Source of the DNA: Mytilus californianus
Lineage: Eukaryota
Direction of reading: 5' to 3'
DNA: 64,000 nt
Assembly (NCBI RefSeq): GCF_021869535.1
Contig: NW_026262679.1
Location: 41,106,001-41,170,000 of the forward strand
Of the stretch, positions 4,952-57,767 are shown one piece after another (the stretch's first letter is position 1; each line of letters begins with the position of its first letter). The notes under the pieces were generated by a model. That model was given only the letters and a program-made list of their open reading frames with translations. It searched no databases and was not told where the DNA came from. A program made the position numbers and the translations under genes.

Positions 4952-5060
4952 ATATATATATATATAATGATATATTGAATATACACTGTCAAAAAATTAA
5001 TAATAATATTCTGATCTAATTTTTTTTTCCAATTCTATTGCAGAAATGTTTACAAGCTAT

Positions 5061-5353
5061 TTATTTGCACCTGTCCTAAGTCAGGAACCTGATGTTCAGT
5101 GGTTGTCGTTTGTCGATGTGGTTCATAAGTGTTTCTCGTTTCTCGTTTTTTTATATAGATTAGACCGTTGGTTTTCCTGTTTGAATGGTTTTACACTAGT
5201 CATTTTTGGGGCCCTTTATAGCTTACTGTTCGGTGTGAGCCAAGGCTCCATGTTGAAGGCCGTACTTTGACCTATAATGGTTAACTTTTACAAATTGTGA
5301 CTTGGATGGAGAGTTGTCTCATTGGCACTCATACCACATCTTTTTATATCTAT
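5061..5353 (-). mobile_element. Short high-copy interspersed repeat (GATGTGGTATGAGTGCCAATGAGACAACTCTCCATCCAAG family)
   Basis: Absent from the paralogue (about 54083 reads AGCTAT|ATAGGAAA); no clear TSD; related copies or fragments near 28860, 30680, 32665 and 41855. Confidence 0.8.
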
Positions 5354-5512
5354 ATAGGAAATTTAGATGTAAAACGACAGAAGCACTATTTTAAATGTTC
5401 ACAAAAGCACACAAACTAATTACATGAACCATTCTCGAGATACTAAAATAGTTGATGACCTATGTCATTGATATGGAAATAACCTTGTCATTACGAAATA
5501 GGAGACATATGG

Positions 5513-5513
5513 C

Positions 5514-5560
<47 letters not shown>
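5513..5560. repeat. (GATT)n microsatellite
   Basis: About 12 tandem GATT units; degenerate counterpart at about 54265-54305. Confidence 0.95.
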
Positions 5561-5561
<1 letters not shown>

Positions 5562-7464
5562 ACAAGGTTAGAAATAGAAGGAAAATCAAATATGATTGTA
5601 AATACTCCAAATAAATAAAATCTGTAAAGGTTTTTCACCCATCATCTCCTTTTATTCATTTTTGAATAGTTTTTTTTTTCTTATTTCAAGGATAAATTTG
5701 AACATGACTTCAGGAGACTACTCATTTCTTATTTTTAGAACTTTTTTGTGACATGTTGAATCTATAAAAAAAAGACTGTCATTTGAACATTCAGAGCATG
5801 AACTACAGAAAGTCTGAAATGGTTCTTGTTCTTCTTTTAACCTGAAATGGTCAGGATTTTTCATATTTTTTGTGAGCTTTTAGGACTTGACCAAAACCTC
5901 ATGTCCTATAAACCAATGAAATTAATTTTACTACTGTAGATTTAAGGACTTCGTCTGACGTAAAATTTGCTCTGATAAGGAATATCGTTCGTTTTTATGG
6001 TTTTATGATTCAGTTTGTTAGTCAAATAAATAAAAGATAAGTAATAAAATGCGTTCATCTTGAAAAAAATACATTCTAAAAAATGAATACATAAAAATTA
6101 TGCCTAACATATATCATACCCATTAAATTTTGATCTTATCTCTTCCAGTTAAAAGTCAATGATGTATAAACAACATCACGTATGCCCTTAGTGTGCGTTT
6201 AACGTTTTAAAAAAAGATGAGCAAACCCAATCTTTATAAAGCAGTAACAAAGTAAAAAGACGAATATGTTGATTTTCTTACTCTTTTATGTAGTTCTATT
6301 GCATATGCAAAATCAGTAAAATTCCAGTCAAAAATAAGGTACTGAAAATTCATAGCTATTCTACATAATGTAGTGATTTACACACACAATTTTTTAATAT
6401 AAAGTTGTTGCACATGTATGTCACAAAATAGACATCGTCATGTCTTTAAGGTTTAACTTGAAAACTTTGTGGTCTTCTTACAAACTGGTCATGACGACGA
6501 AATAAGTCGATGTTACGTTTCTGTTATACCATTATTTGTTCATGTACAGCTAAATCATCATTATGTGGATCTTGATAAAGAAAATGAAAACAATATGATT
6601 TATTGCTCACATTTTGATCAAATCTGAGAGGACAGATTATTTTGTATTTTTACAAATTCAAAACTCAGATTCCAACTTTCTCGAAAAATACAAATTTTAC
6701 TTTCATGCTTTTGAATTATAAAACTGCCTCATATCTTTTTGCATCTTTGACTTTCAAACTATTTTTTTTTATAACACCTATATAGATCAATCCAGAAAAT
6801 GGATCAAACTATAGAATCTGGTTCATAAGTTAAATGACAAGCGACTCATTTCACAGAAATTCTTACGAGAAAAACATACATGCAAGTCATGAACATTTCA
6901 GTATAGCTAACAATCAGTTTCAGTCGTATGATATTTTGTGAAAAAAGCCCCTGGTTGTACGATAAACATTGGAAAACAATCCTGTGCACAAGTAAAGAAC
7001 AATTATTTTAGGTCAAAATATTCAACTGTCATTTTGACTTTTATCAGTTGTTGTTTGGTTTATTTTATTCTTTGGAAGTTGTGTTGCACCTTTCAGATTT
7101 GGAGGTTTAACCATTGATTGGCTAATTCGTCATTTTCCCTAAAAAGCACTATCCAACATTATTTTGTTTCATCATTGGATAACCAATATAATAGGGAAAT
7201 ATTTTATGTTTGATTTACCATTTGCCTTTAGACATGAAATAGGTATGTGTCCTTTGTTGACACCCGTAAGGTGACATATAAATAATCACTCTCGCGGTTT
7301 GGTTCTTTGGTTGATAGTTCTATCATTTGCACTCACCACATCTCCCTATTCTTTTGACACACTTTAGTGTACATTATAATCATCTATTATATCAAAATGG
7401 CATTTTAATTTCATGTAACAACATATTAGGGAATGTCATTAAATTATTCTATACTAACTACCCA

Positions 7465-7520
7465 TCATGGTAAAATGTGCGAAAGCGTCTTAGTTTGGAC
7501 ATCAAGAATCGGTAAAGGCA
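7465..7520 (-). CDS. Ig-TM receptor A, terminal coding exon (VPLPILDVQTKTLSHILP*)
   Basis: Acceptor ...aacatttatag, phase 1, about 100-nt intron from the TM exon; frame and stop conserved in the paralogue at 56168-56223, with a synonymous TCG/TCC change. Confidence 0.7.
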
Positions 7521-7621
7521 CTATAAATGTTAAAGTTAAATTCGTTTTATTGGTTTTCGTTTTCAATTAATTCTTCAATTAAATCTCAGTAAAATGCAAT
7601 GACTAAGAAAATGCCAATTAC

Positions 7622-7780
7622 CTTCTATCTTGCTCAACATTCTTCTTTGGTCCACCTGACGTTTTCTTCTACAGATCTTCACGAACACTAGCAATGTCAA
7701 GAAGCCCAAAACGGTCCCAATTGCTATGATACCAGCAATCATTGTAACCTTTGATGGTCTATTACTTTCAGCAGACTGGT
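7622..7780 (-). CDS. Ig-TM receptor A, transmembrane exon (DQSAESNRPSKVTMIAGIIAIGTVLGFLTLLVFVKICRRKRQ...KIE)
   Basis: ttcatttccag acceptor and G|gtaatt donor, 159 nt, phase 1-1; hydrophobic helix followed by a basic stop-transfer motif; conserved with in-frame indels at 56325-56474. Confidence 0.85.
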
Positions 7781-9151
7781 CTGGAAATGAAATTGAATCA
7801 AATTGTCGTAAATTGTTGCATTTCTATTGTTATAGAAAAGACTGTAAACATAATGATGTTTTTTTTTATTATTTTTTGTCCATTGTATAATCAAAGACAC
7901 ATTTTTATCATCCTTATTATTTAATTATAAAAAAAACGTTATAATAAATAACTGAAAACTTTGCATCATGTTTGCTAAGTTTGCCGTTTGACTGTTGCAT
8001 TACTATCTCGACCATTTTCTAAATTTAAAAACATAAAATGTAAAATACATGTATTTAGACCAAATCAAGGGTCCGTGTAACACTTATCAATTCAAAATTT
8101 TAAAAAGTTTTCAAATTTTAGATTTTTGGAATGTTAATCAAAGTTTTAGAATATCAAAATTCCAAATTTTTTAAATATTTTAATTTTTAAAATTTTCACC
8201 AAATAATTAAAATTTTTAAACTCTAAATATCGTTTTTAAATTTGATAGTTAGATATTTGATCAAACTTTAAAAGTACTAAACTTAACGTGCAGTTTTGAT
8301 TATTTCGTTTTTTGGAAGTTTGAATTTTTAAATTTTTGATTAAGATATCAAAAATAGATAACGGGCGAAAACAGGGGTACCTGTAAAGTGCGAAACGGAA
8401 TAAAAGCGGAACAAAACAAAACAAAACGAAATGAACAGTTACTGTTATACAAAAGTTAATGTGTCAAATAAAAACAGAGGCAGACAGTTGTAAGCAGTGA
8501 AAAATTGGAAAAGAAAAAAAATATTTCTCAAAAGCGGAGAATTCATTTTAAAACAAGAAACACGGCTCTGATTATGATCATTCTTAGTTAGGAATAAAAA
8601 GCACGAAATATATCAAATCATTTTTAATTGCAAAATAAATAATCTAAAGAAGAAGTCTTTTTTTTTTAAAACAAATTGGACATCAATTGCGATAACAGTA
8701 TCCTGAAATTTATAAGGTTTTGCATCTATTGAAAAAAAAAATATTTAAACCTATTTAAACCGACATCAAACAAGTTGATTTACTTTTTAAAAAAATCTCT
8801 AATATAAACTTAGCGTTTCAGATGAATAATTCAGAACCATTTGGTTTCCCCAGCGCCCATCATTTAGGAGTAACAGTGAAAATTGACCAAATCGCAGTAG
8901 GCCAAATAGTATGGTAGGGTTAATTGTGTTCATATTTTCTGCTGTACTTTAGGCAATAAAATGGCTCAAAACACGTGTATTTCCTCAAATTTTATTTAAT
9001 TTTTTTTGTTTTGCTTTACAACTTCTTAACATCTGCAATCATGTAGGTAGATGAAATCATTGAATATACATTTTGACCGATCATCTCAGTTAAAATTTAT
9101 CAACTATTTCGGTTGTTATAAATTGTTGGCCTTCAAATATTCGGCTTTTGA

Positions 9152-9193
9152 ACGTTCCCGATGAAGGTAGATCCAGAAAAGCGCTTCGGACGC
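9152..9193 (+). ncRNA. Minimal type I hammerhead-like motif, core mutated (CCGAUGA)
   Basis: ACGTTC CCGATGA AGGTAGATCCA GAAA AGCGCTTC GGACGC; U4>C in the catalytic core; same defect in the duplicate at 11751-11792. Confidence 0.55.
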
Positions 9194-9527
9194 ATGCAAT
9201 TTTTAACGTTTTGTTTTCATTTTTTATCGATTGCATGACGATCATATGTTGCTTTTTATCATTGATTTCAGTTCAAAGTATTGATACAGTAGGAATACTG
9301 AATTTATGGTGTCGCAATTAACGTTGTAATTTTCAGCGTGTAATGCGGGTAGCAGTGTAAAAAAGATATCAACCTCCCACATTCGAGGCTAGTGCAACGT
9401 TCATTGCGACACCATGAATTCAGTATTCCTACCGTACCAATACTTAGAACTGAAATCAATGACACAAGGCAATATATGATCGTCATGCAATCGATAAAAA
9501 ATGATAACAAAACGTTAAAAATTGCAT

Positions 9528-9569
9528 GCGTCCGAAGCGCTTTTCTGAATCTACCTTCATCAGGAACGC
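9528..9569 (-). ncRNA. Minimal type I hammerhead ribozyme motif with intact CUGAUGA/GAAA core
   Basis: Minus strand reads GCGUUC CUGAUGA AGGUAGAUUCA GAAA AGCGCU UC|GGACGC: 6-bp stem I, short stem II, self-complementary AAGCGCUU stem III, UUC cleavage triplet. Folded by eye only. Confidence 0.65.
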
Positions 9570-10737
9570 TCAAAGCCGAATATTTGAAGGCCAACAATTT
9601 ATAACAACTGAAATAGTTGATAAAAGGTTAAAGATGATCGTTCAAAATGTACATTCAATGATTTCATCTGCCGACATGATTGCAGATAGTAAGAAGTCGT
9701 AAAGCAAAAAAAAAAAAAGTGAAATCAAATTTGAGAGAATACACATGTATTGAGCCATTTTATTGCTTAAATTTCAGTAGAAAATATATACATACTCAAC
9801 CCTACCATACTATTTGGCCTACTGCGAGTTGGTCAGTATTCACTGTTACTTCTAAATGATGGGCGCTGGGGAAACCAAATAGTTCGGAATTATTCATCTG
9901 AAACGCTTAGCTTATGTTAGAGATTTTTTTAACCGTAAATCAACTTGTTTAATGCAGGTTTAAATAGGTTTAAAAATTTTTTTTCTCAATTGATGCAAAA
10001 CCTTAAAAATTTCAGGATACTGTTATCGCAATTGATGTCCCATTTGTTTAAAAAAAAAAAACCGACTTCTTCTCTAAATTATTTATTTTGCAATTAAGAA
10101 TGATTTGATATATTTCGTGCTTTTTATTCCTAACTAAGAATGATCATAATCAGAGCCGTGTTTCTTGTTTTAAAATGAATTCTCCGCTTTTGAGAAAAAA
10201 TTATTTTATTATCCAATTTTTCACTGCTTACAACTGTCTGCTTCTGTTTTTATTAACTACATTAACTTTTAAAAAATAGAAACTGTTCATTTCATTTCAT
10301 TTTCGTTTCGTTTCATTTTGTTTCGTTTCGTTCCGCTTTTATTCCATTTCGCACTTTACAGGTACCCCTGTTTTCGCCCGTTTTCTATTTTTGATATCTT
10401 GATCAAAATTCTGAAAAATCAAATTTTAAAAACGCGAAATAATCGAAACTGCCCGTTAAGTTTAGAACTTTTAAAGTTTGATCGAATATCTAAACTATCA
10501 AATTTAAAAACGATATTTAGAATTTTAAAATTTTAATTATTTGATGAAAATTTGAAATTTTGATATTTTAAAACTTTGATCAAAATTCCAAAAATCTAAA
10601 ACTTTTTTTAAATTTTGAATTGATAAGTGTTACACGGACCATCAATGTTTCCTGAAATGATGTTTCATCAAATGTCGTTAGGACGTTTGACTAAGATGTC
10701 CAATTTAGTATTAATGGAGTAAATAATAATTACTTAC

Positions 10738-11076
10738 CATTATTGGTAAGTACATGCAGCACATGTACAAAAGTAAGATTCACTTCGCACGTATCAAATC
10801 CATAGAATAATTTGTACGTCTTGTTAACATCTGTATCTGTCAGGTTGTGTATGACGAGAGTGTACGCATCTGATCCTATCACCTCGGTGAGTTTATTTTC
10901 GAAGTCGCTGTCAACATGTAATCCGTCATACATCAAACTTTGATGTTCAGTATTTAAGTCACTCCTAGTCCAACGACGTCCTATATCATGTGTAACTTCT
11001 GATACATTTGCTGTTATGTTTACATCTTCTCCAAACAACGGAGTCGGCTTAATTTCTAAGCTGTAGCATAACGCAC
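10738..11076 (-). CDS. Ig-TM receptor A, Ig-like exon copy 1 (GALCYSLEIKPTPLFGEDVNITANV...YGFDTCEVNLTFVHVLHVLTNNG)
   Basis: Acceptor tttctttccgttaaag, donor G|gtaagt, 339 nt, phase 1-1; Ig-like pattern (G-x-x-V-x-I, W, L-x-I-x-N-L-x-x-x-D-x-x-x-x-Y). Confidence 0.8.
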
Positions 11077-11390
11077 CTTTAACGGAAAGAAACATATCCT
11101 TATTCAGGACTTTTTTTACTATGGTACATTTTTATTTTTATTCAATAGGCTATTAAAATTTAATATTTAAATCAAGACAAGTAAATATGCAATAAATGTG
11201 CAACGACAATACGACAATGGTGAAAATGTGAGTAAAATAAAACATATTCCAAAGATACTGCACTTGTAATCCCATCTGATGCCTGATTCAATATATGCCC
11301 GATTCAAAATTTTTACCGGATTAAAACTTTTTTCATTTGATTCAATGTTTCCTGGTTCAGTCTAGATTTCAGAATTGTTTTACTCTAAAA

Positions 11391-13252
11391 TAAAATCTTT
11401 AATATAAGCTTAGCGTTTCAGATGAATAATTCAGAACTATTTGGTTTCCCCAGCGCCTATCATTTAGGAGTAACAGTGAAAACTGACCAACTCGCAGTAG
11501 GCCAAATAGTATGGTAGGGTTAGTTGTGTTTATATTTTCTGCTGTACTTTAGGCAATAAAATGGCTCAAAACACGTGTATTCCCTCAAATTTTATTTTAT
11601 TTTTTTTGTTTTGCTTTACAACTTCTTACCATCTGCAATTATGTCGGCAGATGAAATCATTGAACATACATTTTGAACGATCATCTCAGTTAAAATTTAT
11701 CAACTATTTCGGTTGTTATAAATTGTTGGCCTCAAATATTCGGCTTTTGAACGTTCCCGATGAAGGTAGATCCAGAAAAGCGCTTCGGACGCATGCAATT
11801 TTTAACGTTTTGTTTTCATTTTTTATCGATTGCATGACGATCATATGTTGCTTTTTATCATTGATTTCAGTTCAAAGTATTGATACAGTAGGAATACTGA
11901 ATTTATGGTGTCGCAATTAACGTTGTAATTTTCAGCGTGTAAAGCGGGTAGCAGTGTAAAAAAGATATCAACAACCTCCCACATTCGAGGCTAGTGCAAC
12001 GTTCATTGCGACACCATGAATTCAGTATTCCTACCGTACCAATACTTAGAACTGAAATCAATGATGCAAGGCAATATATGATCGTCATGCAATCGATAAA
12101 AAATGATAACAAAACGTTAAAAATTGCATGCGTCCGAAGCGCTTTTCTGAATCTAACTTCATCAGGAATGCTCAAAGCCGAATATTTGAAGGCCAACAAT
12201 TTATAACAACCGAAATAGTTGATAAAAGGTTAAAGATGATCGTTCAAAATGTACATTCAATGATTTCATCTGCCGACATGATTGCAGATAATAAGAAGTC
12301 GTAAAGCAAAAAAAAAAAAAAAATTGAAATTAAATTTGAGAGAATACACATGTATTTAGCCATTTTATTGCTTAAATTTCAGTAGAAAATATATACATAC
12401 TCAACCCTACCATACTAATTGGCCTACTGCGAGTTGGTCAGTATTCACTGTTACTTCTAAATGATTGGCGCTGGGGAAACCAAATAGTTTTGAATTATTC
12501 ATCTGAAACGCTAAGCTTATATTAGAGATTTTTTTAACCGTAAATCAACTTGTTTGAGGCAGGTTTAAATAGGTTTAAATTTATTTTTTTTTCTCAATTG
12601 ATGCAAAACTTTAAAAATTTCAGGATACTGTTATCGCAATTGATGTCCCATTTGTTTAAAAAAAAAAACCGACTTCTTCTTTAAATTATTTATTTTGCAA
12701 TTTAGAATGATTTGATATATTTCGTGCTTTTTATTCCTAACTAAGAATGATCATAATCAGAGCCGTGTTTCTTGTTTTAAAATGAATTCTCCGCTTTTGA
12801 GAAAAATTTATTTTGCTATCCAATTTTTCACTGCTTACAACTGTCTGCCTCTGTTTTTATTTTATACATTAACTTTTAAATAATAGTTACTGTTCATTTC
12901 ATTTCATTTTCGTTTCTGTTCGTTTTGTTTCGTTTCGTTCCGCTTTTATTCCATTTCGCACTTTACAGGTACCCCTGTTTTCGCCCGTTTTCTATTTTTG
13001 ATATCTTGATCAAAATTCTGAAAAATCAAACTTTCAAAAAGCGAAATAATCAAAACTGCCCGTTAAGTTTAGAACTTTTAAAGTTTGATCAAATATCTAA
13101 ACTATCAAATTTAAAAACGATATTTAGAATTTTATAATTTAATTATTTGATGAAAATTTGGAATTTTTAAATTTAAAACTTTGATCAAAATTCCAAAAAT
13201 CTAAAACTTGAAAACTTTTTTAAATTTTAAATTGATAAGAGTTACACGACCC
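11391..13252. mobile_element. Second, left-truncated copy of the foldback element
   Basis: Lacks the outer ~720 bp of the left arm; keeps the spacer, the full right arm and ATCAA at 13253-13257. Confidence 0.88.
12130..12171 (-). ncRNA. Hammerhead motif copy with intact core but weakened stems I and II
   Basis: Minus strand GCAUUC CUGAUGA AGUUAGAUUCA GAAA AGCGCU UC|GGACGC. Confidence 0.5.
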
Positions 13253-13349
13253 ATCAAGGTTTCCTGAAATGATGTTTCATCATATGTCGTTAGGACGTTT
13301 GACTAAGATGTTCAATTTAGTATTAATGGAGTAAATAATAATTACTTAC

Positions 13350-13691
13350 CATTATTGGTAAGTACATGCAGCACATGTACAAAAGTAAGATTCACTTCGC
13401 ACGTATCAAATCCATAGAACAATTTATACGTCTTGTTAACATCTGTATCTGTCAGGTTGTGTATGACGAGAGTGTACGCATCTGATCCTATCACCTCGGT
13501 GAGTTTATTTTCGAAGTCGCTGTCAACATGTAACCCGTCATACATCAAACTTTGATGTTCAGTATTTTTAAAGTCACTCCTAGTCCAACGACGTCCTATA
13601 TCATGTGTAACTTCTGATACATTTGCTGTTATGTTTACATCTTCTCCAAACAACGGAGTCGGCTTAATTTCTAAGCTGTAGCATAACGCAC
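13350..13691 (-). CDS. Ig-TM receptor A, Ig-like exon copy 2
   Basis: Same splice sites as copy 1, 342 nt; by eye differs by three synonymous changes and one in-frame 3-nt indel (DLN vs DFKN). Confidence 0.8.
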
Positions 13692-14020
13692 CTTCAACGG
13701 AAAGAAACATATCCTTATTCAGGACTTTTTTTACTATGGTACATTCTTATTTTTATTCAATGGGCTATTAAAATTTAATATTTAAATCAAGAAAAGTAAA
13801 TATGCAATAAATGTGCAACGACAATAGGACAATGGTGAAAATGTGAGTAAAATAAAACTTATTCCAAAGATACTGCACTTGTAATCCCATCTGATGCCTG
13901 ATTCAATATATGCGCGATTCATTTTTTACCAGATTAAAACTTTTTCATTTGATTCAATGTTTCCTGGTTCACTCTAGATTTCAGAATTGTTTTACTCTAA
14001 ATTCAGTGTTCCCGGTTAAG

Positions 14021-14023
<3 letters not shown>

Positions 14024-14068
<45 letters not shown>
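14024..14068. repeat. (CT)n microsatellite
   Basis: Pure CT dinucleotide run. Confidence 0.95.
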
Positions 14069-14071
<3 letters not shown>

Positions 14072-14299
14072 CACACATCTCCACCAAAATATTGGGTTAA
14101 ACAAATTGGTGGTGTCTCAGGTTTCTTAAAGTTTTGTGTGATATTGAATAAAAAGGATAATCTCCATGTCAAAAGTTCACCCTCAAACCCAGTTGGAGTA
14201 TTTTTAGTCAAGAAAACATCAGTAATTGTGAAAATAATTGGGTATCTTATACACAATTTTACACTCTCAATTATACTTGAAGATACAAGAAAAACTTAC

Positions 14300-14358
14300 C
14301 ACAGTCCATCTTTCGGATTGAAACAACCAACAGCAAAATATTGACGACAGCATGATTC
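14300..14358 (-). CDS. Candidate signal-peptide exon of receptor A (NHAVVNILLLVVSIRKMDC)
   Basis: Acceptor ttttttgttgacag, strong donor G|gtaagt, phase 1 end joins the Ig exon to give ...MDC-GALCYS; the start codon would need an upstream exon that was not found. Confidence 0.5.
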
Positions 14359-14803
14359 CTGTCAACAAAAAAATATAAGCGTATACAGTAGTTAACTTCT
14401 CTATTGTGACTGTCACACTCAGAAATCGTGTGAACAAATGAAATCCAACAACCTTTATGGCGTGAAATAAAGGTAAAAAGATTAGCTCTGTTTATGTCAA
14501 TTGAGCTTGAATGTCACAAAGTTAAACGTTTATTTGCTTCAAAAAAATTAAGTTATATTTACTTTTCAACTTCTAAGATTGTCCTCTCTCTCGATCTACA
14601 AGTCGATTGTGGTGTATGTGGGGTTTTTTTTGTGCTATTTTCGGTTTGTTGCTTCTCCGCTTTCAATGATAATGGATTTAACTAGTTTCGACCCACTGAT
14701 GCATTTTATTATCAAACTGATTTTGGTAATTTGCTAATTGTAAACGAAGGAACTCTGTAAGCCAGTTTTAGATGATTTAGTTATTCGGCTTATTCCATTT
14801 TAT

Positions 14804-15910
14804 TAGATCACCTGGCCCAAAGTGCCAGTGTAAGTTTTTCCCATCACTTGGCGTCTGTCGTCGTGGTCAGTCGTCCGTTTTATTTGTTAACTTTTATAAG
14901 AATCATCTCTTCTGAAACTACTGGGCCAAAAACCAAACTTGGCCACAATCATCATTGGGATATCTTGTTTTTAAAAATGTGTCCAATGACCCCGCCTGCC
15001 AACTAACATGGCCAACATGGCTAAAATAGAACATAGGAGTAAAATGCAACTTTTGTATATTATCTTGAAAACCACTATAGATATAGAAAGTTTGAGAGGG
15101 CAAAACAGTTCAGAATGATGAGATCTATCTTCTTTCAATTTACCTCATAACTGCCTAACTTGTAGGAGTCATTGCCCTTAAATGACGGATTTTACCAATT
15201 ATGTTTTTTATCATTTTTGCCTATCATTTCAAAAATTATAATAGATAGATATAAACTTCATTTGCAAAAATGAATACCAAGACAAGATCTACAAAATAGT
15301 CAACATGGCAGAAATCCTTAGTCGGCTCTTTATTGGAGTAATTGCCCTTTAATGACGATATTAATTTTCTATTTTTTTTTGCGCTTTTGCCTATTATCTT
15401 GAAAACTATGAAAGATATATAGAAACTTTAAATGTAAAAATGATCAGTAAGACAAGATCTACAAGTAAGTCAATATTGCAGAAATCGTCAGTTGGCTCCT
15501 TAAAGGAGTTATCGCCCTTGAATGACGATTTTTACCAGTTTTTGCGTTTTTGCCTATTATTTTGAAACTATAATAGATAGAGAGAATTTTAGAGAGCAAA
15601 GGTGATCCACAAGGCAAGATCAACAAATAAGCTGATAAAGCTAAAATCGTTGGTCTACTCTTTATATGCGTAAGTTCCCTTATATCACAATGTTTACCAA
15701 TTCTTTGAGTTTTTGTCTATTATTTTGAAAATTAAACTATAATAGATAGATAGAAATTTTAACAACCAAAAATGATCATCAAGACAAGATCTGTAAATCG
15801 GTCAGTTGTCTTCTAATGTTGTTATTGCCCTTAAATGACGATATATTTTTTTACTCATTTTGGTGTTTTGGCCAAAAACTATCGATAAGATTAAGACTGT
15901 AAACAGAGAA
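14804..15910 (+). mobile_element. Helentron-like non-autonomous element with ~165-bp internal tandem repeats
   Basis: Starts TTAGATCACCTGGCCC...CATCACTTGGCGTCTGTCGTCGT; about five degenerate repeats containing TTGCCCTTAAATGACG and AAGACAAGATCTAC. Confidence 0.6.
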
Positions 15911-16880: not shown

Positions 16881-18297
16881 ATAAGCAATATAAGTTCAAC
16901 AAAAAAGAAATTTTAAAGTCACGAATAACATTTTGTCCTACAATGTTCGCGCACTAAAGTCGGTTTCGTACGTTAACATGGTTAATACAACTGGCGAGAA
17001 AAATATATTTTAAGAAATTAGCATAATCACATTGTGCATACGATTTATTTTGTATATTTGGCCTCATACATGATTTGAACGTACCTGTTTAAACATGCGT
17101 TGTGCGCCCTGCAATTTATATTACGTCTATATTATAACTGCATACTGCGCCATCGGATGAATTTTAAAATATGTTTATCAAAAAAAATATCTTACTTTGC
17201 TTTCGGGTGTCAGGTACTTAGCTCAGTGGAAGTTTTAGCTCCTTGTCATGTCGACAACATAAACATGCCACCAACAGCAGAAACAAGATGGGTAAGCCGA
17301 TTAAAAGCAATCTTGAATTAACGGTGCAAAAATGCAATCAATGTATGTCATAAATGATAAACAATAATATTTAATCCCTTGTGCTATAATCTAACTTCCT
17401 TGTTTTGATACACGTAATTGTGTTTGTAAACAGTGATACGCTTGGCTGCATTTTTATCAATATTGAAATATTACATTCGAAAAATGCAATGTTAGCACTT
17501 AACTATTTTTGTTAAGCATTTTTTGGGCGTATGAAAAAAAATAAATTTTTAGTATGGATTGTAAATTGAGGGGTTGTATCAGAGTTGATAAATTCACTCG
17601 AAACTAGGTGAGACATGCGCCGTAGTGATAAAATTGAAAATTGAATATTTTAAGCAACAACAAAAAAAAAGTCCGTAGCATATACCCAAGCGCTATGTTT
17701 TTTTTTCTTCAATATTTTCAACCGAAATCTGCAAATCGAGCGTGGTTTTTATGTGATATCATGTTTCGAAATATTTTTTTTGCGTTTAAGCTATTGGATA
17801 AATGACCCTACCTATTAAGTCGCAAAAATTCTGTCTTAATCATAATGATTAACATTGATGCACATTTTAAATTACTTTTTCCAGTGTTCAACAGTAACTA
17901 ACTATCTGTTTACGTAGTCCTAAGTATGTAAATATATTTATCGGTTTATTTTATACAATCACGATCCAGAAAATTCCCAGCTCAATTGCCGGAAATTTAC
18001 AAAAATGAAAATTTAAAAAAAGATACATTAAATGTAGTTAAAACCGAAGATAGGCGCATGGTAAAAACAATCAAAGCAAATATGTTTACAAAATATTTAT
18101 AGACTGTCCGGTAAAGTCACGGAAAAATGAATTGAAGACGTCTCTGTTTTTCCCAGTATGCATACAACTGTATTTTTTTCTGTTTAATCTTGTCTATTAA
18201 ATAATTGCATAAAATTCTTATATGCTAATGAGGATTTACAAGTAATATAATTAGTGCATTTTCCGCTGACACCAGGGAGAGAATAGTGCACATCCAT

Positions 18298-19585: not shown

Positions 19586-20249
19586 AAAAGACGCATGATA
19601 CGATTACGGTGCGTACAACATATGCTCCTGTTATAACCTTAATCACGTACTCTCAAGATCAAAAGTTTCGAATGCGAAATATATACTTGTAATAAGTTTG
19701 AGAACATTAAAACCAAAAGACCTGAAGAGTTGCAATCTTATCTTTTATATCAACTACATTATTCTTATAAACTTATAGATACTGGTTATGTAGCACATAA
19801 ATCAAGTCGAAACCGAAGCACTGGTTACTATGCGAATGGTTCTCTGGGATACTGATAGTTGACCAGCAGTATACTAACCTAGAAGGAAGTAAAAACGAAC
19901 TACATGATTTCCGTGCGTAGATCACTTGTATTTGGATTTATTTTATCATCACCAGGTACACTCGAGACCAAAATTTTAGAAAGTTTGAAGTATATATAAT
20001 TTAAATTTATGTCTATGAATAATTCTGAAAGATAACTTAGTGTTTTAATGTTATGTCGAATCTAATATTGGAAAAGGATTCCCTTGAATAAATCTGTTGT
20101 ACGAGATACCGTGGTCGAATTTTTTTCACTATGTAACAAACTGAGAAATAGTGTGGGTGGACGTGTGTTGTTTCCAATCAAATCAGGGATTTGATGTCCT
20201 AGGTATTGATGTGTAAAAAGCCATCAAAGATACCAGGTTTATGATCAAG

Positions 20250-20297
20250 CATGCCCGATACGTGTTTCGTCCATATAAGACTCATGAGTGGCGCTCG
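20250..20297 (-). ncRNA. Decayed minimal hammerhead of a second family (CUCAUGA GUC-loop-GAC GAAA)
   Basis: Minus strand GAGCGCCA CTCATGA GTC TTATATG GAC GAAA CACGTATC GGGCAT; stem II perfect, core G5 mutated. Confidence 0.5.
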
Positions 20298-20744
20298 AAT
20301 CACAACAGTATGTAAATCAAATCATTAACTCACTTGTTAAAACATTATTTAATATATATTCCAATACACTTATATGGGTTTTTTTTGTGCTTTAGGTCTA
20401 TCTAATTAGTCAAGCCTTTTTCAACTGGTTTTTACAGTTTGTTCTTATGTTGTGCTGTTACACCATTGTCTCAGTTTAGGGGGATTAGCGCTCGCAAACA
20501 TGTTTTACCCGCCACTGTCAGTCTGTGCTTTTCCAAAGTAGTCTGTAAGTCATTGGTTGTATTTGATTGCTGTCTACAGTATTTGCTTTCCAACCCTTAA
20601 TTTAACCTTTGTATATAGAAATATGGTCACCTGGAATTCCCCGTCCGGTAGAAAGACCCATGCTGATAGGCATCAACTTTGCTGTGCGGGGTTCAAATAC
20701 CCATCCTCGTCTGTTCGAAACGGGTGCGTTAAATCCTAGCTTTT

Positions 20745-20775
<31 letters not shown>

Positions 20776-21243
20776 TTGTGCATCTTGCCGATCTGAGGAG
20801 TCGAGCCATTTACAACTTATGTTTACAATTTGTTCTAGTCTTGAGCTGTAACATCACTGTCCCAAGTTAGGAAGTTGACCGCTCACAAACCCGCGCGCCA
20901 CATTCTTTATGTGCCTATTTAAATCAAATCCAAGATTATTCATTGTATTACATTAAATACCTCACCTTCATAAATTTAGATATCAGTCAACTCGCTGCAT
21001 TGTTCAACCGGAAACCAGCCAGAAAACAGAACTATACCCCTGTGACAACCTCTCCCACCTGACGCAAACGCGCCATAACCCTTCATCTTTTTTCCGGTTC
21101 CATGGTTCATGCTGCACGCTTTTGAGAAGGAAAACGTTTTTTGCTTAACCACGTTGTTTCTTAATAGAAAAATTATAGTTATATTATTTTGTAATATCAT
21201 TTTGTATTATTTATTTGTTTTATTCGGATAATTTATCTGTATA

Positions 21244-22779
21244 ATGGCTGATAAAACACCAACTTTGTCAACGCAAGAGGTAAGTGACACACACACACAC
21301 ACAAGTGCCAGTGGTTTGTTGTCCCCTTGGCGTTCGGCCACTCATTCGGATGAGTTTTGGGATAGAAGTATGGAGTTTATCCCTGGTGTGTCTGGTGTAA
21401 GTCTGGCACTTCTGGTGCTAGTCAGTTGAGGTTATCTAGGCCTAGCAGGGTATCACATACCGTAACTAGGCCTGCTGAGATACCAATCTCTCCTGTTTCT
21501 TGCACGACAAGTATCCAGGAGACGCTACCAGCTGGCATCAGGAGTGACCCCTCTTCCAGGACTAGGTGGCCTATGAATTTTGCTGTTAACGCAAAATTCA
21601 TTGAGTTTGGTAACAGAATTACCCTTATGAAGTCTAGGGGTCTGTCTCAGGATCCTCCACAGGACCCTTCCAGACCTTCTAGACATCTGGTGGAAGATGA
21701 TTCTGTTTCCTTGGCTTCCAGAAGCCAAGAAGGTAACTTTCTTGAAGACCAAGGTGCTTCTTCTGATAATGACAGTGTTGGGAGCACAGAGGGAGATGCT
21801 ATGATTTCGAAGGAGCCTTCTTCAGGCAACCCCTCTGAATGTCTTAGGAGTCTAGTTTATTCTATTCGTAGGGATATGTCGGATATACCCTAGTCTTCTC
21901 CACCAAGGGTTTCGTCTGCCCCTTCAGATTTTATGGCTTGCTCTGGTTTAGTCAAACCAAATTTGAAGGGGTATCATTCTTTTCCAGAGTCGGGTCATTT
22001 CACAACAGCTTTGTCTTTGTTAACTCGTCTTTGGTTGAGAACCATGCTTACACTAGCAAAACTGGTGGTAATAAGTTCTCTGGTTTCGGACCTGCCTCTT
22101 ACCCAGGGAGATGTAGATCTAAGGACTTTGATATTCGTGGATCTTCCTTTGGAATGTCGGCTCCTACTGTGATAAGGCTTATTCTGGTTTACTGGGTTTG
22201 AAACCTGTGGACGGTCTCAGACTTTCTCAAGCTTCATATGTCAAGTCGGAGAATAATCTGAGGTGTCTTACTTTTGTTCTTGAGACAGCTGAACACTATT
22301 TGTCGGCAGCTGGGTCTCTTTTAAAGGACAAAGGGGAGGAATTTTCAGACTTGAATTCTATGCTTCTACAGGTAGACAAGAGTCTTGGAATGTCTCAATT
22401 CCTTCTTCATGGCACCTTGGCCAATTTTACTCTTGCTAGGAGACAGGCGATTCTTGCATCATCGACTATCACTGAAGCTCTCCAGCAGAGACTTCTGAGT
22501 TATTCTCTGTCTAAGGACAAGTTGTTCTCTGTTTCCTTGGATCAGCTACAGGAGGAGGTGAATAAGGCTCCTCCTGTTGTCAAGGTGGATGTTAAGGTCA
22601 CTGATGGGAAAAGATTTGTCAAGACTATTCAGATTAACAATCCTTCTTCCTCTCATCAGCCCAAGGCTTCTTCTTCCTCTTCTTCTTCACAGCCTATGAA
22701 GAGATCAGCTGTTTCTCGTCCTAACCTTTCAGATGGCAAGAAAGCCAAAGTTGTAAAGGGTAAGAAGCAGGGTAAGTGA
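21244..22779 (+). pseudogene. DIRS ORF1 (gag-like), interrupted
   Basis: Ser-rich ORF segments 21244-21429, 21426-21893 and 22198-22779 lie between the left ITR and the RT; assignment is positional. Confidence 0.6.
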
Positions 22780-22883
22780 TGTGTTGTCCCCTCCGTTAAA
22801 TCCATCCCCACTGGAAGAGGAAAATTTTACAACTCCTCTTCCTCATCTTACAGTGGGGACAGGCTTTCTTACTTTCTAGATCA

Positions 22884-24600
22884 ATGGTCTCAGACAAGTG
22901 GGTACTTTCGATTTTACGGAGGGAATTGGAGCTTCAGATTTTGGAACAGCCTCCTCTTTCTCCTTTTCCAATCATTCTGTCAGTGACAAAGGACTCTCGA
23001 AAGAATCAGTTATTACAAGACGAAGTGAACATTCTAATTCAGAAGGGTGCGTTGGAGGAGGTAATTCCTGACCTACTTTTCATCTAGGGTTTTATTCCCG
23101 GCTGTTCTTTGTTCCCAAGAAGTACGGGAAAATGAGACCGGTTCTCTACCCTTCTGTTCTGAATCAGTATCGGGTGGTCCCACATTTCAAAATGGAAACC
23201 AACAGGTCAATCAGATCGACACTTCATTCAGAAATTTGGACAATCTCTCTAGATTTGATGGATGCTTTTATTCACATCTCGATTTCTCCCAAGTTTCGTC
23301 ATTTCCTGAGACTGGTTTGGGCAGACAAAGTGTACAGTTTCAAGGCTATGCCTTTTGGCCTTTCTACTGCCCCCTAGTTTTTACTAGGCTTTTCAGGCCG
23401 TGGTGTCTTATCTTCATACTCAGGCGCGGTACTCATTCACTCCTACCTAGACGATTCTCTAATCAAAAATCATTGCCGATCTCTTCTGGAGGAACACACC
23501 GTTTTGCCTATCCAATGACTCCTGAAACTGGGTTCTTTGATTTCATGGGAAAAATCAGAGATAATTTCCAGTCAAAATTTCATTTTCCTGGGTGAACATT
23601 TTCGGACAGATACGAGTCTAGTTCTTCCTTCAGAAGAGAAGGTATTCAAGGTACATCAGTTAGTCAGTGCTCTGATGCAGTTTTCAACTGTTCCAGCTCG
23701 TCTATTTCTTCAGCTGGTGGGTTTCTTGATATCTATCATGGACGTCATTCCACTAGGACGTCTACACATTCGTCCTATCCAGTAGTATCTGACGGAGTTT
23801 TGGCACCCAATTTCTCAGCTGTGGGAGGCACCTGTTCCAATTCTGCCTCGGTTGTTACCTCATCTTCAGTGGTGGCTTCAGAAGAAACATCTTCTGAAGG
23901 GAGTTTTGTTGGATCCTCCAGACACCAGTCTATCTCTGTTCACAGATGCGAGGTTGATGGGTTGGGGAGCTTATCTGGAGGGCAGAATAGCTTCAGGTCT
24001 TTGGTCAGGTGCTCAGTTGGAGGAACACATCAATCTTCTAGAGATGAGAGCTGTCTTACTTTCTCTCCTTCATTTTCAGGCTGTGATTCAGGGTCAGTCA
24101 ATACTGGTTGCCACGGACAACTCCACAGTAGTGCTTATCTTCAGAATCAAGGGGAACTCATTCCTTTTCTCTGTGTCATCTGAGCAAGGAAATTCTCATT
24201 CTGTATCACAGTCTCGATATAATTCTGTCAGTGAGAATGTTCCAGGCAGTCAAAATCTTCTGGCGGATACTCTTTCCCGTTCGCGTGTTCCAGTGAACAC
24301 AGAATGGGAACTTCATCCGTCAGTGTTTCAGGAGATCACTCTTTGTTGGGATCGTTCTCATATAGATCTGTTTGCCACCAGTCTGAATCATAAGTTGGAG
24401 ACTTACGTTTCCCCCATTCCAGACGCAAAAACTTTGGCCGTAGATGCTATGACCCTATCTTAGAAGGGGATGTTCAGTTACATGTTTCCCCCCTTTCGTC
24501 CTCTTCCCAAGATCTTGCACAAAATTCAGAGGGATCTTTGCAAGACCATTCTTATTGCTCCGGCTTGGCCAAGGCAGTCCTGGTTTCCAGAACTACTTCT
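22884..24600 (+). pseudogene. DIRS ORF2: reverse transcriptase, RNase H and N6-adenine methyltransferase-like domain
   Basis: LDLMDAFIHI, MPFGLSTAP, YLDD (about 23445), LFTDARLMGWGAYL, HINLLEMRAV, ATDNSTVV, DLFATSLNHKL and SYMFPPF motifs across frameshifted segments. Confidence 0.92.
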
Positions 24601-24699
24601 TCTGCGTTTCGACTTCCTCTAAGGTACGATCTACTTTCTCAGTTCAAGGGAAGAAAGATTCATCAGGGTCTAAAGAATCTCCATCTGCACGCTTGGTTA

Positions 24700-25680
24700 C
24701 TGTCAAGAATTCCCTCAGAAAGGGAGGCTTTTCTGAAGGAGCAACCAAGCGTATTGCAGGGTCAGCCCAGGCAATCTACAGGAGCCGTTTATTACTCCAA
24801 ATGGTCTATTTTTCTTCTTGGTGTCAGTCGAAACAGATTGATCCTCTCTCAGTTACTGTGCAACAGTTAGCGGATTTTTTCGTTTATCTTTTTGAAGAAA
24901 AAGGTTATACTCCGTCTACTATAAAGGGATATAGATCTGCCATAGCCAGAACTATATGTCTTTCAGGAGGCTCAGAATTTGGTGATAATGAGTTTTTGTC
25001 CTTGTTGATTAAAAACTTTTGTCTTAATAGACCTCGTCAAAGGCGTTTGGTTCCTTCTTGGGACTTAGGTTTAGTCTTGAAGGTTCTTCAGTTTCCGCCT
25101 TTTGAACCTTGCATTCAGCCTCCTTCAAACATTTATCTTATAAATGTTGTTTTCTTATAGCTTTGGCTACTGGTCGTAGAAGGAGCGAGATTCATGCCTT
25201 GTCTATTTCTGAGTCTTGCCTCTGCTTTGTGTCTGCTAAGACCTCAGTTACACTTCTTACTGATCCTTCTTTTCTAGCTAAGAATCAATTACCTGATAAA
25301 GGTTCTGGGTTAATCACTATTCCTGCCTTACCTGCTTCTACAGGTAATCAGATTTTGTGTCCTGTGAGAACTTTGCTTTTGTGCCTAGCTTCGTCAGCAA
25401 AATTAAAACCTGCCGGTTCTTCTAGGTTGTTCATTCCTATTAAAAAAACAATTTCTGACATTTCTGCTAAAACCATGTCTACCTGGATTTGCAATATTGT
25501 TATGTTGCCCTATAAGTCTGCTTCATCTGAAGTTTTAGCTAAACACCAAGTTAAAGCTCATGAAGTCAGAGCCTTAGTCTCTTCTTGGAATATTTTTAAT
25601 TCCTCCTCTATGTCGGAAATCATGTCAGCTGGTTTTTGGAGGTCAGATAGTGCCTTTTAGAACCATTATTTACGATCTAT
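24700..25680 (+). pseudogene. DIRS ORF3: tyrosine recombinase with phage-integrase-like N-terminal domain
   Basis: PSTIKGYRSAI, LATGRRRSEI, HEVRAL, GFWRSDSAF*NHYL (catalytic R-H-x-x-R-W-Y pattern, interrupted by a stop). Confidence 0.92.
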
Positions 25681-25787
25681 GCCTCTTCATTGTGACAACC
25701 TCTATTCTTTAGGACCTTTGGTTGCTGCTTAACAGGTTGTTTTTTCTCCTCCTAGTGAGGGGGATTCAGTGCTTCGTTAAATTCTGT

Positions 25788-25872
25788 TTTATGAAGGTGA
25801 GATATTTAATGTAATAAAAATCGAATTTTTAGAATAAAAATTTAGTTTTGTAAATTAAATACTCACCTTCAT
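25788..25872 (+). repeat. DIRS internal complementary region (ICR)
   Basis: First half TATGAAGGTGAGATATTTAATGTAATA is complementary to the left terminus; second half TTTTTAGAATAAAAATTTAGTTTTGTAAATTAAATACTCACCTTCAT is complementary to the right terminus. Confidence 0.9.
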
Positions 25873-26803
25873 CAGTCAGAGGTCCCGCCCCCTCCCCTTC
25901 ATCCCCCTTGGTGCCTGGCAATTCAAGGAACAAATGATGAAGGTTTATGGCGCGCATGCGTCAGGTGGGGGAGGTTGTCACAAGGGTACAGTTCTTTTTT
26001 CTGGCTGGTTTCCAGTTGAATAATGCAGCGAGTGGACTGATATCTAAATTTATGAAGGTGAGTATTTAATTTACAAAACTAAATTTTAATTCTAAAAACA
26101 CTTTCATTCCCACGATCCGATGAGTATATGAGTTAATGTTTGGTAATGATGACAATAAAATTGTTTCACTATATAATCTATTTAGTTTACTACTTACAAG
26201 GTTTTTTATATTATGATTTTATGGCAAAATGCAAGTTTGCAAGCAGATCTCTTGATTTGTTGAGTGCCAGATATAAATCAAATATATTTTTTTATTATCA
26301 ATCTACGTGTATAAAGGTTTATGACACACTTGTATTGTCAGTCATAAGATTGTGGTGCTTCCATTTTGGGAAATCAGAGACATTTCTTGCATAAATGTGG
26401 TTAAAAATAAAGCAATGCGATTTTTTTATGGGTGTATGAACATAAACACCAAACTTATTTCTTCATGAAGATAGTGACTAAGTGGACTGCAATTTAAAGC
26501 AATGGACAGCTGTGTTAAGACCATTGCCAAAATTTTATCAAATAGATGACGAAAAAGTGAACAAAGAATAATTTATGTGGTCATATATGTATAAAAAAAC
26601 TAGAAAAATGAAAGACGGGTGTTTTACAGTAATGGCAAAGTTTTAAGAATATAAACATTAATGCAACTGTAATATATCGTGAATTCAAAAGATATTCAAG
26701 GATATTTAATATTTAGCTTAGATTTATATAAAGATGAGTAGTTTAATAATTTGGCTTCAAAAATGTCAAACTAGATCGATAAACTGTTTAAAACCGAATT
26801 TAA

Positions 26804-56167: not shown

Positions 56168-56223
56168 TCATGGTAAAATGTGGGAAAGCGTCTTAGTTTG
56201 GACACCAAGAATCGGTAAAGGCG
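56168..56223 (-). CDS. Ig-TM receptor B, terminal coding exon (APLPILGVQTKTLSHILP*)
   Basis: Same length, splice site and stop as 7465-7520. Confidence 0.65.
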
Positions 56224-56474: not shown

Positions 56475-56490
56475 CTGGAAATGAAATAGA

Positions 56491-57422: not shown

Positions 57423-57767
57423 CATTATTGGTAAGTACAAGTACATGTACAAAAGTAAGATTCACTTCACACGTATCAAATCCAAAGTACAATTTGTACG
57501 TCTTATTAACATCTGTATCTGTCAGATTGTGTATGGTGAGAGTGAACACATCTGATCCTATCAGCTCGGTGAATTTATCTTCAAAGTCGCTGTCAACATG
57601 TAACCCGTCATACATCAAATCATATTCATGGTGACGTTCAGCGTTTAACTCACTCCTAGTCCAACGACGTCCTATAGCATGTGTTACTTCCGATACTGTT
57701 GCTGTTATGTTCACATCTTCTCCAAACAACAGAGTCGGCTTAATTTCTATGCTGCAGCATAACACAC
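57423..57767 (-). CDS. Ig-TM receptor B, Ig-like exon
   Basis: 345 nt, phase 1-1, open frame, clearly homologous to 10738-11076 with in-frame indels. Confidence 0.8.

What the first reader, a model, noticed from the sequence alone, without database searches (positions are those of the whole stretch)
8791..14001. Duplicated symmetric Ig exon bracketed by competing long inverted repeats: a possible RNA-structure splicing switch
The duplication gives leader-Ig2-[foldback']-Ig1-[foldback]-TM with all exon junctions in phase 1. In pre-mRNA the arm at about 11995-13252 can pair locally or with the complete arm at 8069-9328, which would loop out Ig exon 1 (10738-11076). Competing pairing of this type is known to drive exon skipping, mutually exclusive choice (Dscam docking/selector) and back-splicing. 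Predicted products: 2-Ig, 1-Ig or circular Ig-exon RNA. The pairing is visible in sequence; its use in vivo is inference.
Basis: partly seen in the sequence, partly recalled or inferred. Interest (0 to 1): 0.72.

Follow-up and report, generated by a model that had tools for sequence, protein, structure and literature searches.

The report
Transposon hairpins around a duplicated mussel exon
In a California mussel gene for an antibody-like surface protein, a hairpin-shaped jumping gene landed in an intron and a 2.6-kb piece holding part of it plus one exon was later copied in tandem; the RNA pairings that could affect splicing are real on paper but look like by-products, not a built switch.

Summary
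Window 8790-11389 and 11390-14001 are tandem copies (about 96% identical). Each carries a 339/342-nt phase 1-1 exon on the minus strand.

The repeats are the arms of a 2,571-bp gene-less DNA transposon (8070-10640). It has a 6-bp target duplication, many copies across the genome, and a clean empty site in a paralogous segment at 57.3 kb. The tandem duplication came later and copied 536 nt of the left arm, the loop, the right arm and the exon.

The genome is Mytilus californianus and the gene is RefSeq LOC127734586. Four annotated isoforms (X1, X2, X3, X5) contain both duplicated exons. One (X4) lacks the downstream copy. Orthologues in three other Mytilus species have a single Ig exon.

Folding shows the rival arm pairings are nearly equal in energy. 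The minimum-energy fold includes the long-range pairing that loops out exon 2b.

Nothing shows that the pairing acts in vivo. X4 may come from ambiguous read mapping, because the two exons are identical over their last 70 nt. Read laying failed, so neither the assembly nor the splicing was checked on reads.

Verdict: a young transposon-plus-duplication rearrangement; the splicing switch is unproven.

The parts
8070..10640 (.). Foldback-shaped, gene-less DNA transposon. Left arm L1 is 8070-9328, the loop is 9329-9394, and the right arm R1 is 9395-10640. Its ends read GGTCCGTGTAACAC / GTGTTACACGGACC.
   Evidence: Arms are 88-93% complementary. The arm is a dispersed family with 2773 first-look candidates, and scored copies on many chromosomes are 82-91% identical. 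The paralogous segment has an empty site. Other copies have 6-bp TSDs.
8064..8069 (.). Left copy of the 6-bp target-site duplication, ATCAAG.
   Evidence: The right copies are ATCAAT at 10641-10646 and ATCAAG at 13253-13258. The empty site at about 57316-57360 reads ...AAATCCAAGTTTCC...
8790..11389 (.). Tandem duplication unit 1 (downstream in the transcript): the inner 539 nt of L1, the loop, R1, exon 2b and 313 nt of upstream intron.
11390..14001 (.). Tandem duplication unit 2 (upstream in the transcript): truncated left arm L2 (11390-11925), loop (11926-11996), complete right arm R2 (11997-13252), exon 2a and intron. The junction lies at 11389|11390.
   Evidence: The units differ by 3.9% in substitutions. 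There is microhomology at the breakpoints. A (CT)n microsatellite starts 18 nt beyond 14001.
10738..11076 (-). Ig-like exon 2b (339 nt, phase 1-1). This is the exon that the long-range pairing would loop out and that RefSeq isoform X4 lacks.
   Evidence: The AlphaFold model has pLDDT 76, and the best Foldseek matches are Ig V domains.
13350..13691 (-). Ig-like exon 2a (342 nt, phase 1-1).
   Evidence: It differs from 2b by four substitutions (three synonymous, one not) and a 3-nt in-frame indel.
14300..14358 (-). Its in-frame start is ATG GAC TGT G. It encodes no signal peptide.
   Evidence: It is the start of RefSeq isoform X5.
17195..17384 (-). 5' UTR exon spliced to the 14358 exon in an RNA contig.
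   Evidence: L038 bases 9-197 match at 94%.
7622..7780 (-). Transmembrane exon (159 nt, phase 1-1).
   Evidence: It matches the RefSeq isoforms at 100%.
5532..6574 (-). Last exon: 15 codons of cytoplasmic tail plus the 3' UTR.
   Evidence: L038 bases 757-1798 match at 93.5%. tblastn places the tail at 6574-6527.
57423..57767 (-). Third Ig-like exon, upstream in the transcript, of the same annotated gene. It belongs to a segmental duplicate (53996-57922) that lacks both the transposon and the tandem duplication.

Best explanation
This is a young, species-specific rearrangement inside the Mytilus californianus gene LOC127734586, which encodes a type I membrane protein with Ig-like domains.

Step 1 (shown): a segment holding the Ig exon, the TM exon and the tail exon was duplicated, giving copies about 46 kb apart that are 85-93% identical.

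Step 2 (shown): a 2,571-bp non-autonomous DNA transposon with 1.26-kb inverted arms inserted 97 nt downstream of the Ig exon of the downstream copy, making a 6-bp target duplication.

Step 3 (shown in the assembly, not checked on reads): a 2.6-kb tandem duplication copied the inner 536 nt of the left arm, the loop, the whole right arm and the Ig exon. Its breakpoints lie in the left arm and in the upstream intron, and they share short imperfect homology.

Because the exon is phase 1-1, the copy is in frame. The default product carries both exons, as in RefSeq X1, X2, X3 and X5.

The 'competing inverted repeats' are simply the three and a half transposon arms that result. In the pre-mRNA, the two loop-proximal arm pairs should snap into local hairpins of about 0.5 kb. 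Only the partnerless outer 716 nt of the upstream arm can compete, across 4.5 kb, for the outer half of the downstream arm (inferred from folding). Any effect on splicing is an incidental by-product of the insertion and the duplication, not an evolved switch (inferred).
For: Transposon. The arm has 2773 first-look candidates, and the scored copies on many chromosomes all begin at arm position 1-2. 6-bp TSDs occur here (ATCAAG) and in further copies: GAAAAG in L011; CAGAAG in L035 and L037, which share flanks; TACGAC/TACGAG in L034; GTAGAT/GTATAT in L036. The paralogous segment runs straight through the insertion point with a single copy of the target.

Order of events. The arms differ from each other by 7-12%. 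The tandem units differ by 3.9%. The paralogous segment has one exon and no transposon.

Gene. XP_052100497-502 of M. californianus map at 100% to 57767-57423, 13691-13350, 11076-10738, 7780-7622 and about 6574. The record's contig length of 132,162,296 equals that of contig C99, which holds the window. Orthologues in three other Mytilus species are 219-220 aa with one Ig domain.

Both exon copies have intact and nearly identical splice sites. They differ by 3 synonymous and 1 non-synonymous substitution.

Assembly. The source assembly was built with hifiasm from HiFi reads of mean length 13.4 kb at 45x (PMC9710001). The window has no N, so a 5.2-kb structure lies well inside single reads.
Against: No reads could be laid, so the tandem duplication rests on the assembly alone. 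The 3.9% divergence between the units is close to the 2.73% heterozygosity reported for this individual. Isoform X4, which lacks 2b, is what a loop-out would produce. The MFE model does contain the long-range pairing. So an effect of the arms on splicing is not excluded.
Confidence: 0.72

Rival explanations
1. The arms measurably affect splicing. The partnerless outer 716 nt of the upstream arm (12537-13252) pairs with the outer half of the downstream arm (8070-8786). This brings the 2a donor close to the TM acceptor, so exon 2b is skipped (isoform X4). Alternatively, pairing of L2 with R1 across exon 2b promotes its circularisation. This would be an accidental, transposon-made case of loop-out by competing pairing.
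For: The rival pairings are nearly equal in energy: R2d-L1d is -871 and R1d-L1d is -861 kcal/mol; R1p-L2 is -768 and R2p-L2 is -754 kcal/mol. The MFE fold has 397 bp of R2d-L1d. RefSeq X4 lacks exactly exon 2b. Inverted Alu pairs flanking exons are reported to promote loop-out skipping in human (bioRxiv 10.1101/2025.03.07.642063).
Against: Local hairpins with loops of 66-71 nt form first during transcription, and R1-distal extends a helix that already exists. Four of the five annotated isoforms keep both exons. X4 can arise from ambiguous short-read mapping, since the exons are identical for 70 nt before the donor. There are no data on circles, RNA editing or in vivo structure.
Confidence: 0.2
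2. Assembly artefact: two haplotypes of a single unit were laid in tandem, so the real gene has one Ig exon here and one complete foldback.
For: The divergence between the units (3.9%) is of the order of the reported heterozygosity (2.73%). Palindromes are hard to assemble. No read check was possible. An RNA contig from another sample (L038) has a single Ig exon between the same flanking exons.
Against: The sequence is gap-free in a HiFi/hifiasm contig, and mean reads of 13.4 kb span the whole 5.2 kb. The junction lies in short homology inside a transposon arm, as expected for a real duplication. A haplotype join would not truncate one arm. L038 is only 89-91% identical to each of the three exons, so it is another allele or species rather than this haplotype.
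Confidence: 0.07
3. An evolved, regulated RNA switch of the Dscam docking/selector type that chooses between the two Ig exons.
For: Only the formal resemblance: one arm has two possible partners.
Against: The arms are transposon sequence. The arrangement is absent from orthologues and from the paralogous segment. The exons are used together rather than exclusively. They encode almost the same domain, differing by one residue and one indel, so a choice between them would gain little.
Confidence: 0.02

Closest known systems
Inverted intronic transposon pairs (inverted Alu repeats) that promote loop-out exon skipping or back-splicing, with competition between pairing within one intron and across introns
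   Same: Transposon-derived complementary sequences lie in both introns that flank an exon: L2 is 313 nt upstream and R1 is 97 nt downstream of exon 2b. R2-distal and L1-distal lie further out. Each arm has more than one possible partner. An annotated isoform lacks the flanked exon.
   Different: The arms are 0.5-1.26 kb, against about 0.3 kb for Alu. All come from one element and its tandem copy. Each proximal arm has a same-intron partner only about 70 nt away. The host is a mollusc. No experimental link to splicing exists here.
Dscam-type docking site/selector sequence competition (mutually exclusive exons)
   Same: One RNA segment can pair with one of several alternatives, and the choice would decide which exon is kept.
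   Different: There are no conserved short docking or selector sites. The exons are not mutually exclusive in the annotation. The pairing partners are young transposon arms.
Long-TIR / foldback-shaped non-autonomous class II transposons (internal-deletion derivatives)
   Same: Inverted arms make up nearly the whole element. It has a short loop, a fixed-length TSD, many dispersed copies and no ORF.
   Different: The TSD is 6 bp, not the 9 bp of Drosophila FB-type elements. The arms are mostly unique sequence rather than satellite arrays. No autonomous partner or superfamily was identified. From memory, a 6-bp TSD fits IS3EU or Dada; this was not tested.
Domain accretion in Ig-superfamily genes by tandem duplication of phase 1-1 exons
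   Same: A symmetric phase-1 exon that encodes one Ig-like domain was duplicated in frame. Annotated mRNAs contain both copies. Orthologues have one.
   Different: The duplication is very recent (about 4% divergence) and has a breakpoint inside a transposon hairpin. The domain lacks the canonical cysteine pair.

Membership tests
Class II (cut-and-paste) transposon, non-autonomous, long TIRs | Terminal inverted repeats with defined ends | tested here: met
   The arms 8070-9328 and 9395-10640 are 88-93% complementary. The same terminal 18-mer occurs in all copies examined.
Class II (cut-and-paste) transposon, non-autonomous, long TIRs | Target-site duplication of constant length | tested here: met
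   A 6-bp TSD occurs here and in the copies L011, L034, L035/L037 and L036.
Class II (cut-and-paste) transposon, non-autonomous, long TIRs | Dispersed multi-copy family and an empty site | tested here: met
   One search shows many chromosomes and 2773 first-look candidates. The empty site lies in the paralogous segment at about 57316-57360.
Class II (cut-and-paste) transposon, non-autonomous, long TIRs | A transposase-encoding master copy with the same ends | tested here: inconclusive
   In three of four longer copies (5.3-8 kb; L034, L035, L037) no ORF above 120 aa with any recognisable domain was found; L036 was not scanned. The genome was not searched exhaustively.
Drosophila FB-type Foldback elements | 9-bp TSD and arms built of tandem subrepeat arrays | tested here: not met
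   The TSD is 6 bp. Only the outer 200 nt or so of each arm shows degenerate A+T-rich short repeats (families D1 and D9).
Hammerhead ribozyme (claimed for this element by note s1-274889) | Match to an Rfam hammerhead covariance model | tested here: not met
   No hammerhead family matched at E<=1 over 7500-14500, nor at E<=10 over 9080-9640, on either strand.
Inverted-repeat-mediated exon loop-out / circularisation | Complementary repeats in both introns that flank the exon | tested here: met
   Pairs I3, I7 and I17 (L2 with R1) and I1, I8, I9 and I14 (R2 with L1).
Inverted-repeat-mediated exon loop-out / circularisation | A skipped-exon or back-spliced RNA product | tested here: inconclusive
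   RefSeq X4 lacks 2b, but this is a Gnomon model and the exon ends are identical. Circles are not testable here.
Inverted-repeat-mediated exon loop-out / circularisation | Dependence of the product on the pairing | not testable with these tools
   This needs minigenes or in vivo structure probing.
Dscam-type docking/selector switch | Mutually exclusive use of the exon variants | tested here: not met
   X1, X2, X3 and X5 contain both 2a and 2b.
Dscam-type docking/selector switch | Conserved docking and selector sequences across species | tested here: not met
   The arms are transposon copies. Orthologues have one Ig exon.
Immunoglobulin-like domain | Ig beta-sandwich fold | tested here: met
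   The AlphaFold2 model has 8 strands, pLDDT 76 and pTM 0.72. All top Foldseek PDB matches are VH, VL or nanobody domains, with TM 0.6-0.7.
Immunoglobulin-like domain | Pfam Ig models above threshold, and the canonical B-F cysteine pair | tested here: not met
   The exon alone has no Pfam hit. X1 reaches 19 bits against the 21.8-bit cut-off for PF00047. Both canonical Cys are replaced (A and L) in the alignment with relatives that keep LTC...YRC. Those relatives do pass Ig_3, V-set and ig.

The most novel reading that the evidence does not exclude
A single transposon insertion followed by a partial tandem copy created a natural competition circuit in a mollusc pre-mRNA. The half-arm left without a local partner pairs across 4.5 kb and causes skipping (isoform X4) or circularisation of the newly born Ig exon. 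Under this reading, the inclusion level of a brand-new domain is set by RNA structure from the moment the exon is born.
Probability: 0.15. Interest if true: 0.55.

Novelty: new member of a known kind. Interest (0 to 1): 0.3.

Why it matters
The locus records, step by step and with the empty site still present, how an Ig-family gene gains domains. Other mussels have one Ig exon and M. californianus has three. It also shows how a hairpin-shaped transposon can end up flanking a new exon with kilobase-scale complementary RNA. If the pairing does affect inclusion of exon 2b, this would be a clean non-primate, non-Alu test case for the competition rule of loop-out skipping and back-splicing, with arms that can be deleted one at a time. 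If it does not, the locus is an ordinary transposon-plus-duplication polymorphism in a genome known for structural variation.

Tried and rejected
There is therefore no read evidence for the duplication junction, depth, splice joints or circles. They were used only in scripts on the closed machine: local alignment to loci already fetched and folding.

2. The look-up of encoding contigs found nothing on record for the two exon ORFs or for XP_052100500.

3. Pfam on the exon alone gave no hit.

4. Rfam gave no hammerhead or other credible family. The miRNA-precursor matches only reflect the palindrome.

5. I rejected the reading of the 14.3-kb exon as a signal-peptide leader (MLSSIF...). That frame ends in phase 0 at the GTAAGT donor and runs into stops in the Ig exon (and reading).

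6. I looked for a counterpart of that exon near the 57-kb copy and found none.

7. I looked for a transposase in longer copies of the element and found none.

8. The word search with the exon found only two Logan fragments, so there were no junction-bearing RNA contigs of this species.

9. I built and searched no joined spliced model of my own. Exons were searched singly by reference, and the full-length proteins used are database entries returned by the tools.


Full report
**What is in the sequence**

The region is A+T-rich eukaryotic DNA (about 30% G+C) and the window holds no N. The repeat finder shows two things.

- First, there is a tandem duplication with a period of 2599-2615 nt, in collinear blocks of 88-100% identity. 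In a global alignment the units (8790-11389 and 11390-14001) have 2530 matches and 102 mismatches, or 3.9%.
- Second, there are kilobase-scale inverted repeats. 8074-9326 is complementary to 9395-10663 and equally to 11997-13248. 11389-11925 is complementary to 11997-12535 and to 9395-9930.
- The breakpoints of the duplication lie in about 13 nt of imperfect homology (TTTACT..AAA). A (CT)n microsatellite starts 18 nt beyond the outer boundary.

**The gene lies on the minus strand**

- The two duplicated exons are 13691->13350 (2a, 342 nt) and 11076->10738 (2b, 339 nt).
- Both have AG|G acceptors and ATG|GTAAGT donors, and both are phase 1-1.
- The TM exon is 7780->7622, also phase 1-1.

**The inverted repeats are a transposon**

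- The left arm has 2773 first-look candidates in the genome. The scored copies lie on many chromosomes, are 82-91% identical, and all start at arm position 1-2.
- A paralogous segment in the same window (53996-57922, 85-93% identical to 4968-8069 plus 10675-11227) runs straight through the insertion point. It reads ...GACCAAATCCAAGTTTCC..., where our locus has ATCAAG, then 2,571 bp, then ATCAAG or ATCAAT. That is an empty site with a 6-bp target duplication.
- Further copies have 6-bp duplications of their own: GAAAAG, CAGAAG (two loci with the same flanks), TACGAC/TACGAG and GTAGAT/GTATAT.
- Most other copies continue past what is the 'loop' here into shared internal sequence. Complete copies of 5.3-8 kb have the same 1.26-kb arms at both ends but no ORF of note in the three scanned. 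The element in the window is therefore an internal-deletion derivative that kept both arms and about 64 nt of one inner edge.
- It is not an FB-type Foldback, because the TSD is 6 bp and the arms are not satellite arrays. I did not identify its superfamily.
I confirm the transposon. Rfam finds no hammerhead at E<=1 over 7 kb or at E<=10 over the centre.

**Order of events**

- The arms differ from each other by 7-12%. The tandem units differ by 3.9%. The paralogous segment has one exon and no transposon.
- The order is therefore: segmental duplication, then transposon insertion 97 nt downstream of the Ig exon, then the 2.6-kb tandem duplication.
- One breakpoint of the tandem duplication lies inside the left arm, so the upstream copy has only the inner 536 nt of that arm.

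**The gene**

- A profile of the exon and its genomic relatives found 537 proteins at E<=0.001. One is XP_052100500.1, 'uncharacterized protein LOC127734586 isoform X4 [Mytilus californianus]'. It lies on a contig of 132,162,296 bp, the length of contig C99 that holds the window. Assembly figures in PMC9710001 also match: N50 117,871,512 and NG50 120,330,192.
- All five isoforms map at 100% to the window.
  - X1 (442 aa) is signal peptide + Ig exon at 57767-57423 + 2a + 2b + TM + tail.
  - X2 and X3 are 5' variants of X1.
  - X5 (298 aa) starts with MDCG in the 14358-14300 exon and has 2a + 2b + TM + tail.
  - X4 (329 aa) is X1 without 2b.
- A Logan RNA contig from another sample (L038) splices 17384-17195, 14358-14298, one Ig exon, 7781-7622 and 6573-5532. 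This proves the 14.3-kb exon and its phase. It also shows an in-frame stop upstream of MDCG.
- Orthologues in M. trossulus, M. galloprovincialis and M. edulis are 219-220 aa with one Ig domain. The three-exon state is specific to M. californianus.

**The domain**

- The domain is Ig-like by fold. The AlphaFold2 model has pLDDT 76, and the top Foldseek matches are VH, VL and nanobody domains.
- It is also Ig-like by homology to relatives that pass Pfam Ig_3, V-set and ig.
- It has lost both canonical cysteines and stays below Pfam thresholds itself.
- 2a and 2b differ by three synonymous changes, one non-synonymous change and a 3-nt indel.

**Would the RNA pairings compete?**

In the transcript the order is 2a, R2 (1256 nt), loop, L2 (536 nt), 2b, R1, loop, L1, TM.

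- RNAduplex energies are nearly equal for every combination.

| Pairing | Energy (kcal/mol) |
|---|---|
| R2d-L1d | -871 |
| R1d-L1d | -861 |
| R2p-L2 | -754 |
| R1p-L2 | -768 |
| R1p-L1p | -755 |
| R2p-L1p | -739 |

- The MFE fold of the 6,070-nt stretch from 2a to the TM exon forms both proximal hairpins locally (about 495 bp each). It splits the outer half of L1 between R2-distal (397 bp, looping out 2b) and R1-distal (253 bp).
- The model ignores co-transcriptional order, helicases, editing and proteins. The local partners are 66-71 nt away, and R1-distal merely extends an existing helix. By the known rule for inverted repeats, within-intron pairing favours linear splicing.

**Does it act?**

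- X4 is what a loop-out of 2b would give. However, X4 is a Gnomon model. The two exons are identical over the last 70 nt before the donor and the first 121 nt after the acceptor, so short reads across an Ig-TM junction cannot tell 2a from 2b.
- The run search found DNA contig runs from several studies that hold most words of 10642-11700. It also found putative RNA runs that hold a share close to the exon's share, which only suggests expression.
Junction reads, depth, splice joints and circles therefore remain untested.

**Is the duplication an assembly artefact?**

- I cannot exclude it on reads. The 3.9% divergence is near the reported 2.73% heterozygosity.
- Against it, the sequence is gap-free in a hifiasm contig built from 13.4-kb HiFi reads at 45x. 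The junction truncates a transposon arm at a short homology, as a real duplication would.
- I put the artefact at about 7%.

**Comparison and verdict**

- The nearest known mechanism is transposon-derived inverted repeats flanking an exon, as with inverted Alu pairs and loop-out skipping (10.1101/2025.03.07.642063).
- It is not a Dscam-type switch. The exons are used together, the pairing sequences are young transposon arms, and nothing is conserved.
- The gene itself is already annotated. What is new is the anatomy: the transposon, the empty site, the partial tandem copy and the resulting pairing geometry.
- I rate it a new member of a known kind, with interest 0.3. The splicing-switch reading is possible but unproven.

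Exons were searched singly by reference.

Noticed in passing
window 53996-57922: Segmental duplicate of the Ig-TM-tail part of the gene (85-93% identical). Its TM exon (about 56475-56325) is intact, with good splice sites and a 9-nt in-frame deletion. None of the RefSeq isoforms I retrieved uses it: they splice from the 57.4-kb Ig exon across about 44 kb to exon 2a.
   Followed up: partly
Rfam covariance models find no hammerhead at E<=10 on either strand. Only generic hairpin (miRNA-precursor) matches appear, and they reflect the palindrome.
   Followed up: yes
window 9133-9456 versus 11732-12060: The palindrome centre is almost identical between the two tandem units (0-1 mismatch per 100 nt), while the rest differs by 2-9 per 100. 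This may be gene conversion or a local cold spot.
   Followed up: no
window 14020-14070: A (CT)n microsatellite of about 50 nt lies 18 nt outside the outer boundary of the tandem duplication. Its possible role in the breakage was not tested.
   Followed up: no
L038 (Logan RNA contig SRR13891807_87560): A transcript with the same exon chain but a single Ig exon. That exon is only 89-91% identical to each of the three window exons and looks like a mosaic of them. The UTRs are 93-97% identical. It is a divergent allele or a sister species. If it is the same species, it hints at presence/absence variation of the duplicated exon.
   Followed up: partly
window 20000-26000: A G+C-richer block (41-44%) in the long intron. 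An ORF at 23852-24460 gives a sub-threshold RT_RNaseH match (22.7 bits against 24.8). This is probably a decayed LTR retrotransposon.
   Followed up: partly
G000 C2:37.46-37.73 Mb, and proteins P0001, P0002, P0004-P0008: A cluster of related genes with one or two canonical Ig domains (LTC...YRC kept). They pass Pfam Ig_3 and V-set. The family of the window's gene is a cysteine-less offshoot of it.
   Followed up: partly
window 15160-15498: Two tandem copies of a 169-nt unit at 75% identity (family D10). The nature of this repeat is unknown.
   Followed up: no
window 5064-5356 and 41849-42139; 9109-9224 and 40793-40906: Further short dispersed repeats are shared between distant parts of the window. 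One of them is a 115-nt piece of the foldback arm at 40.8 kb.
   Followed up: no
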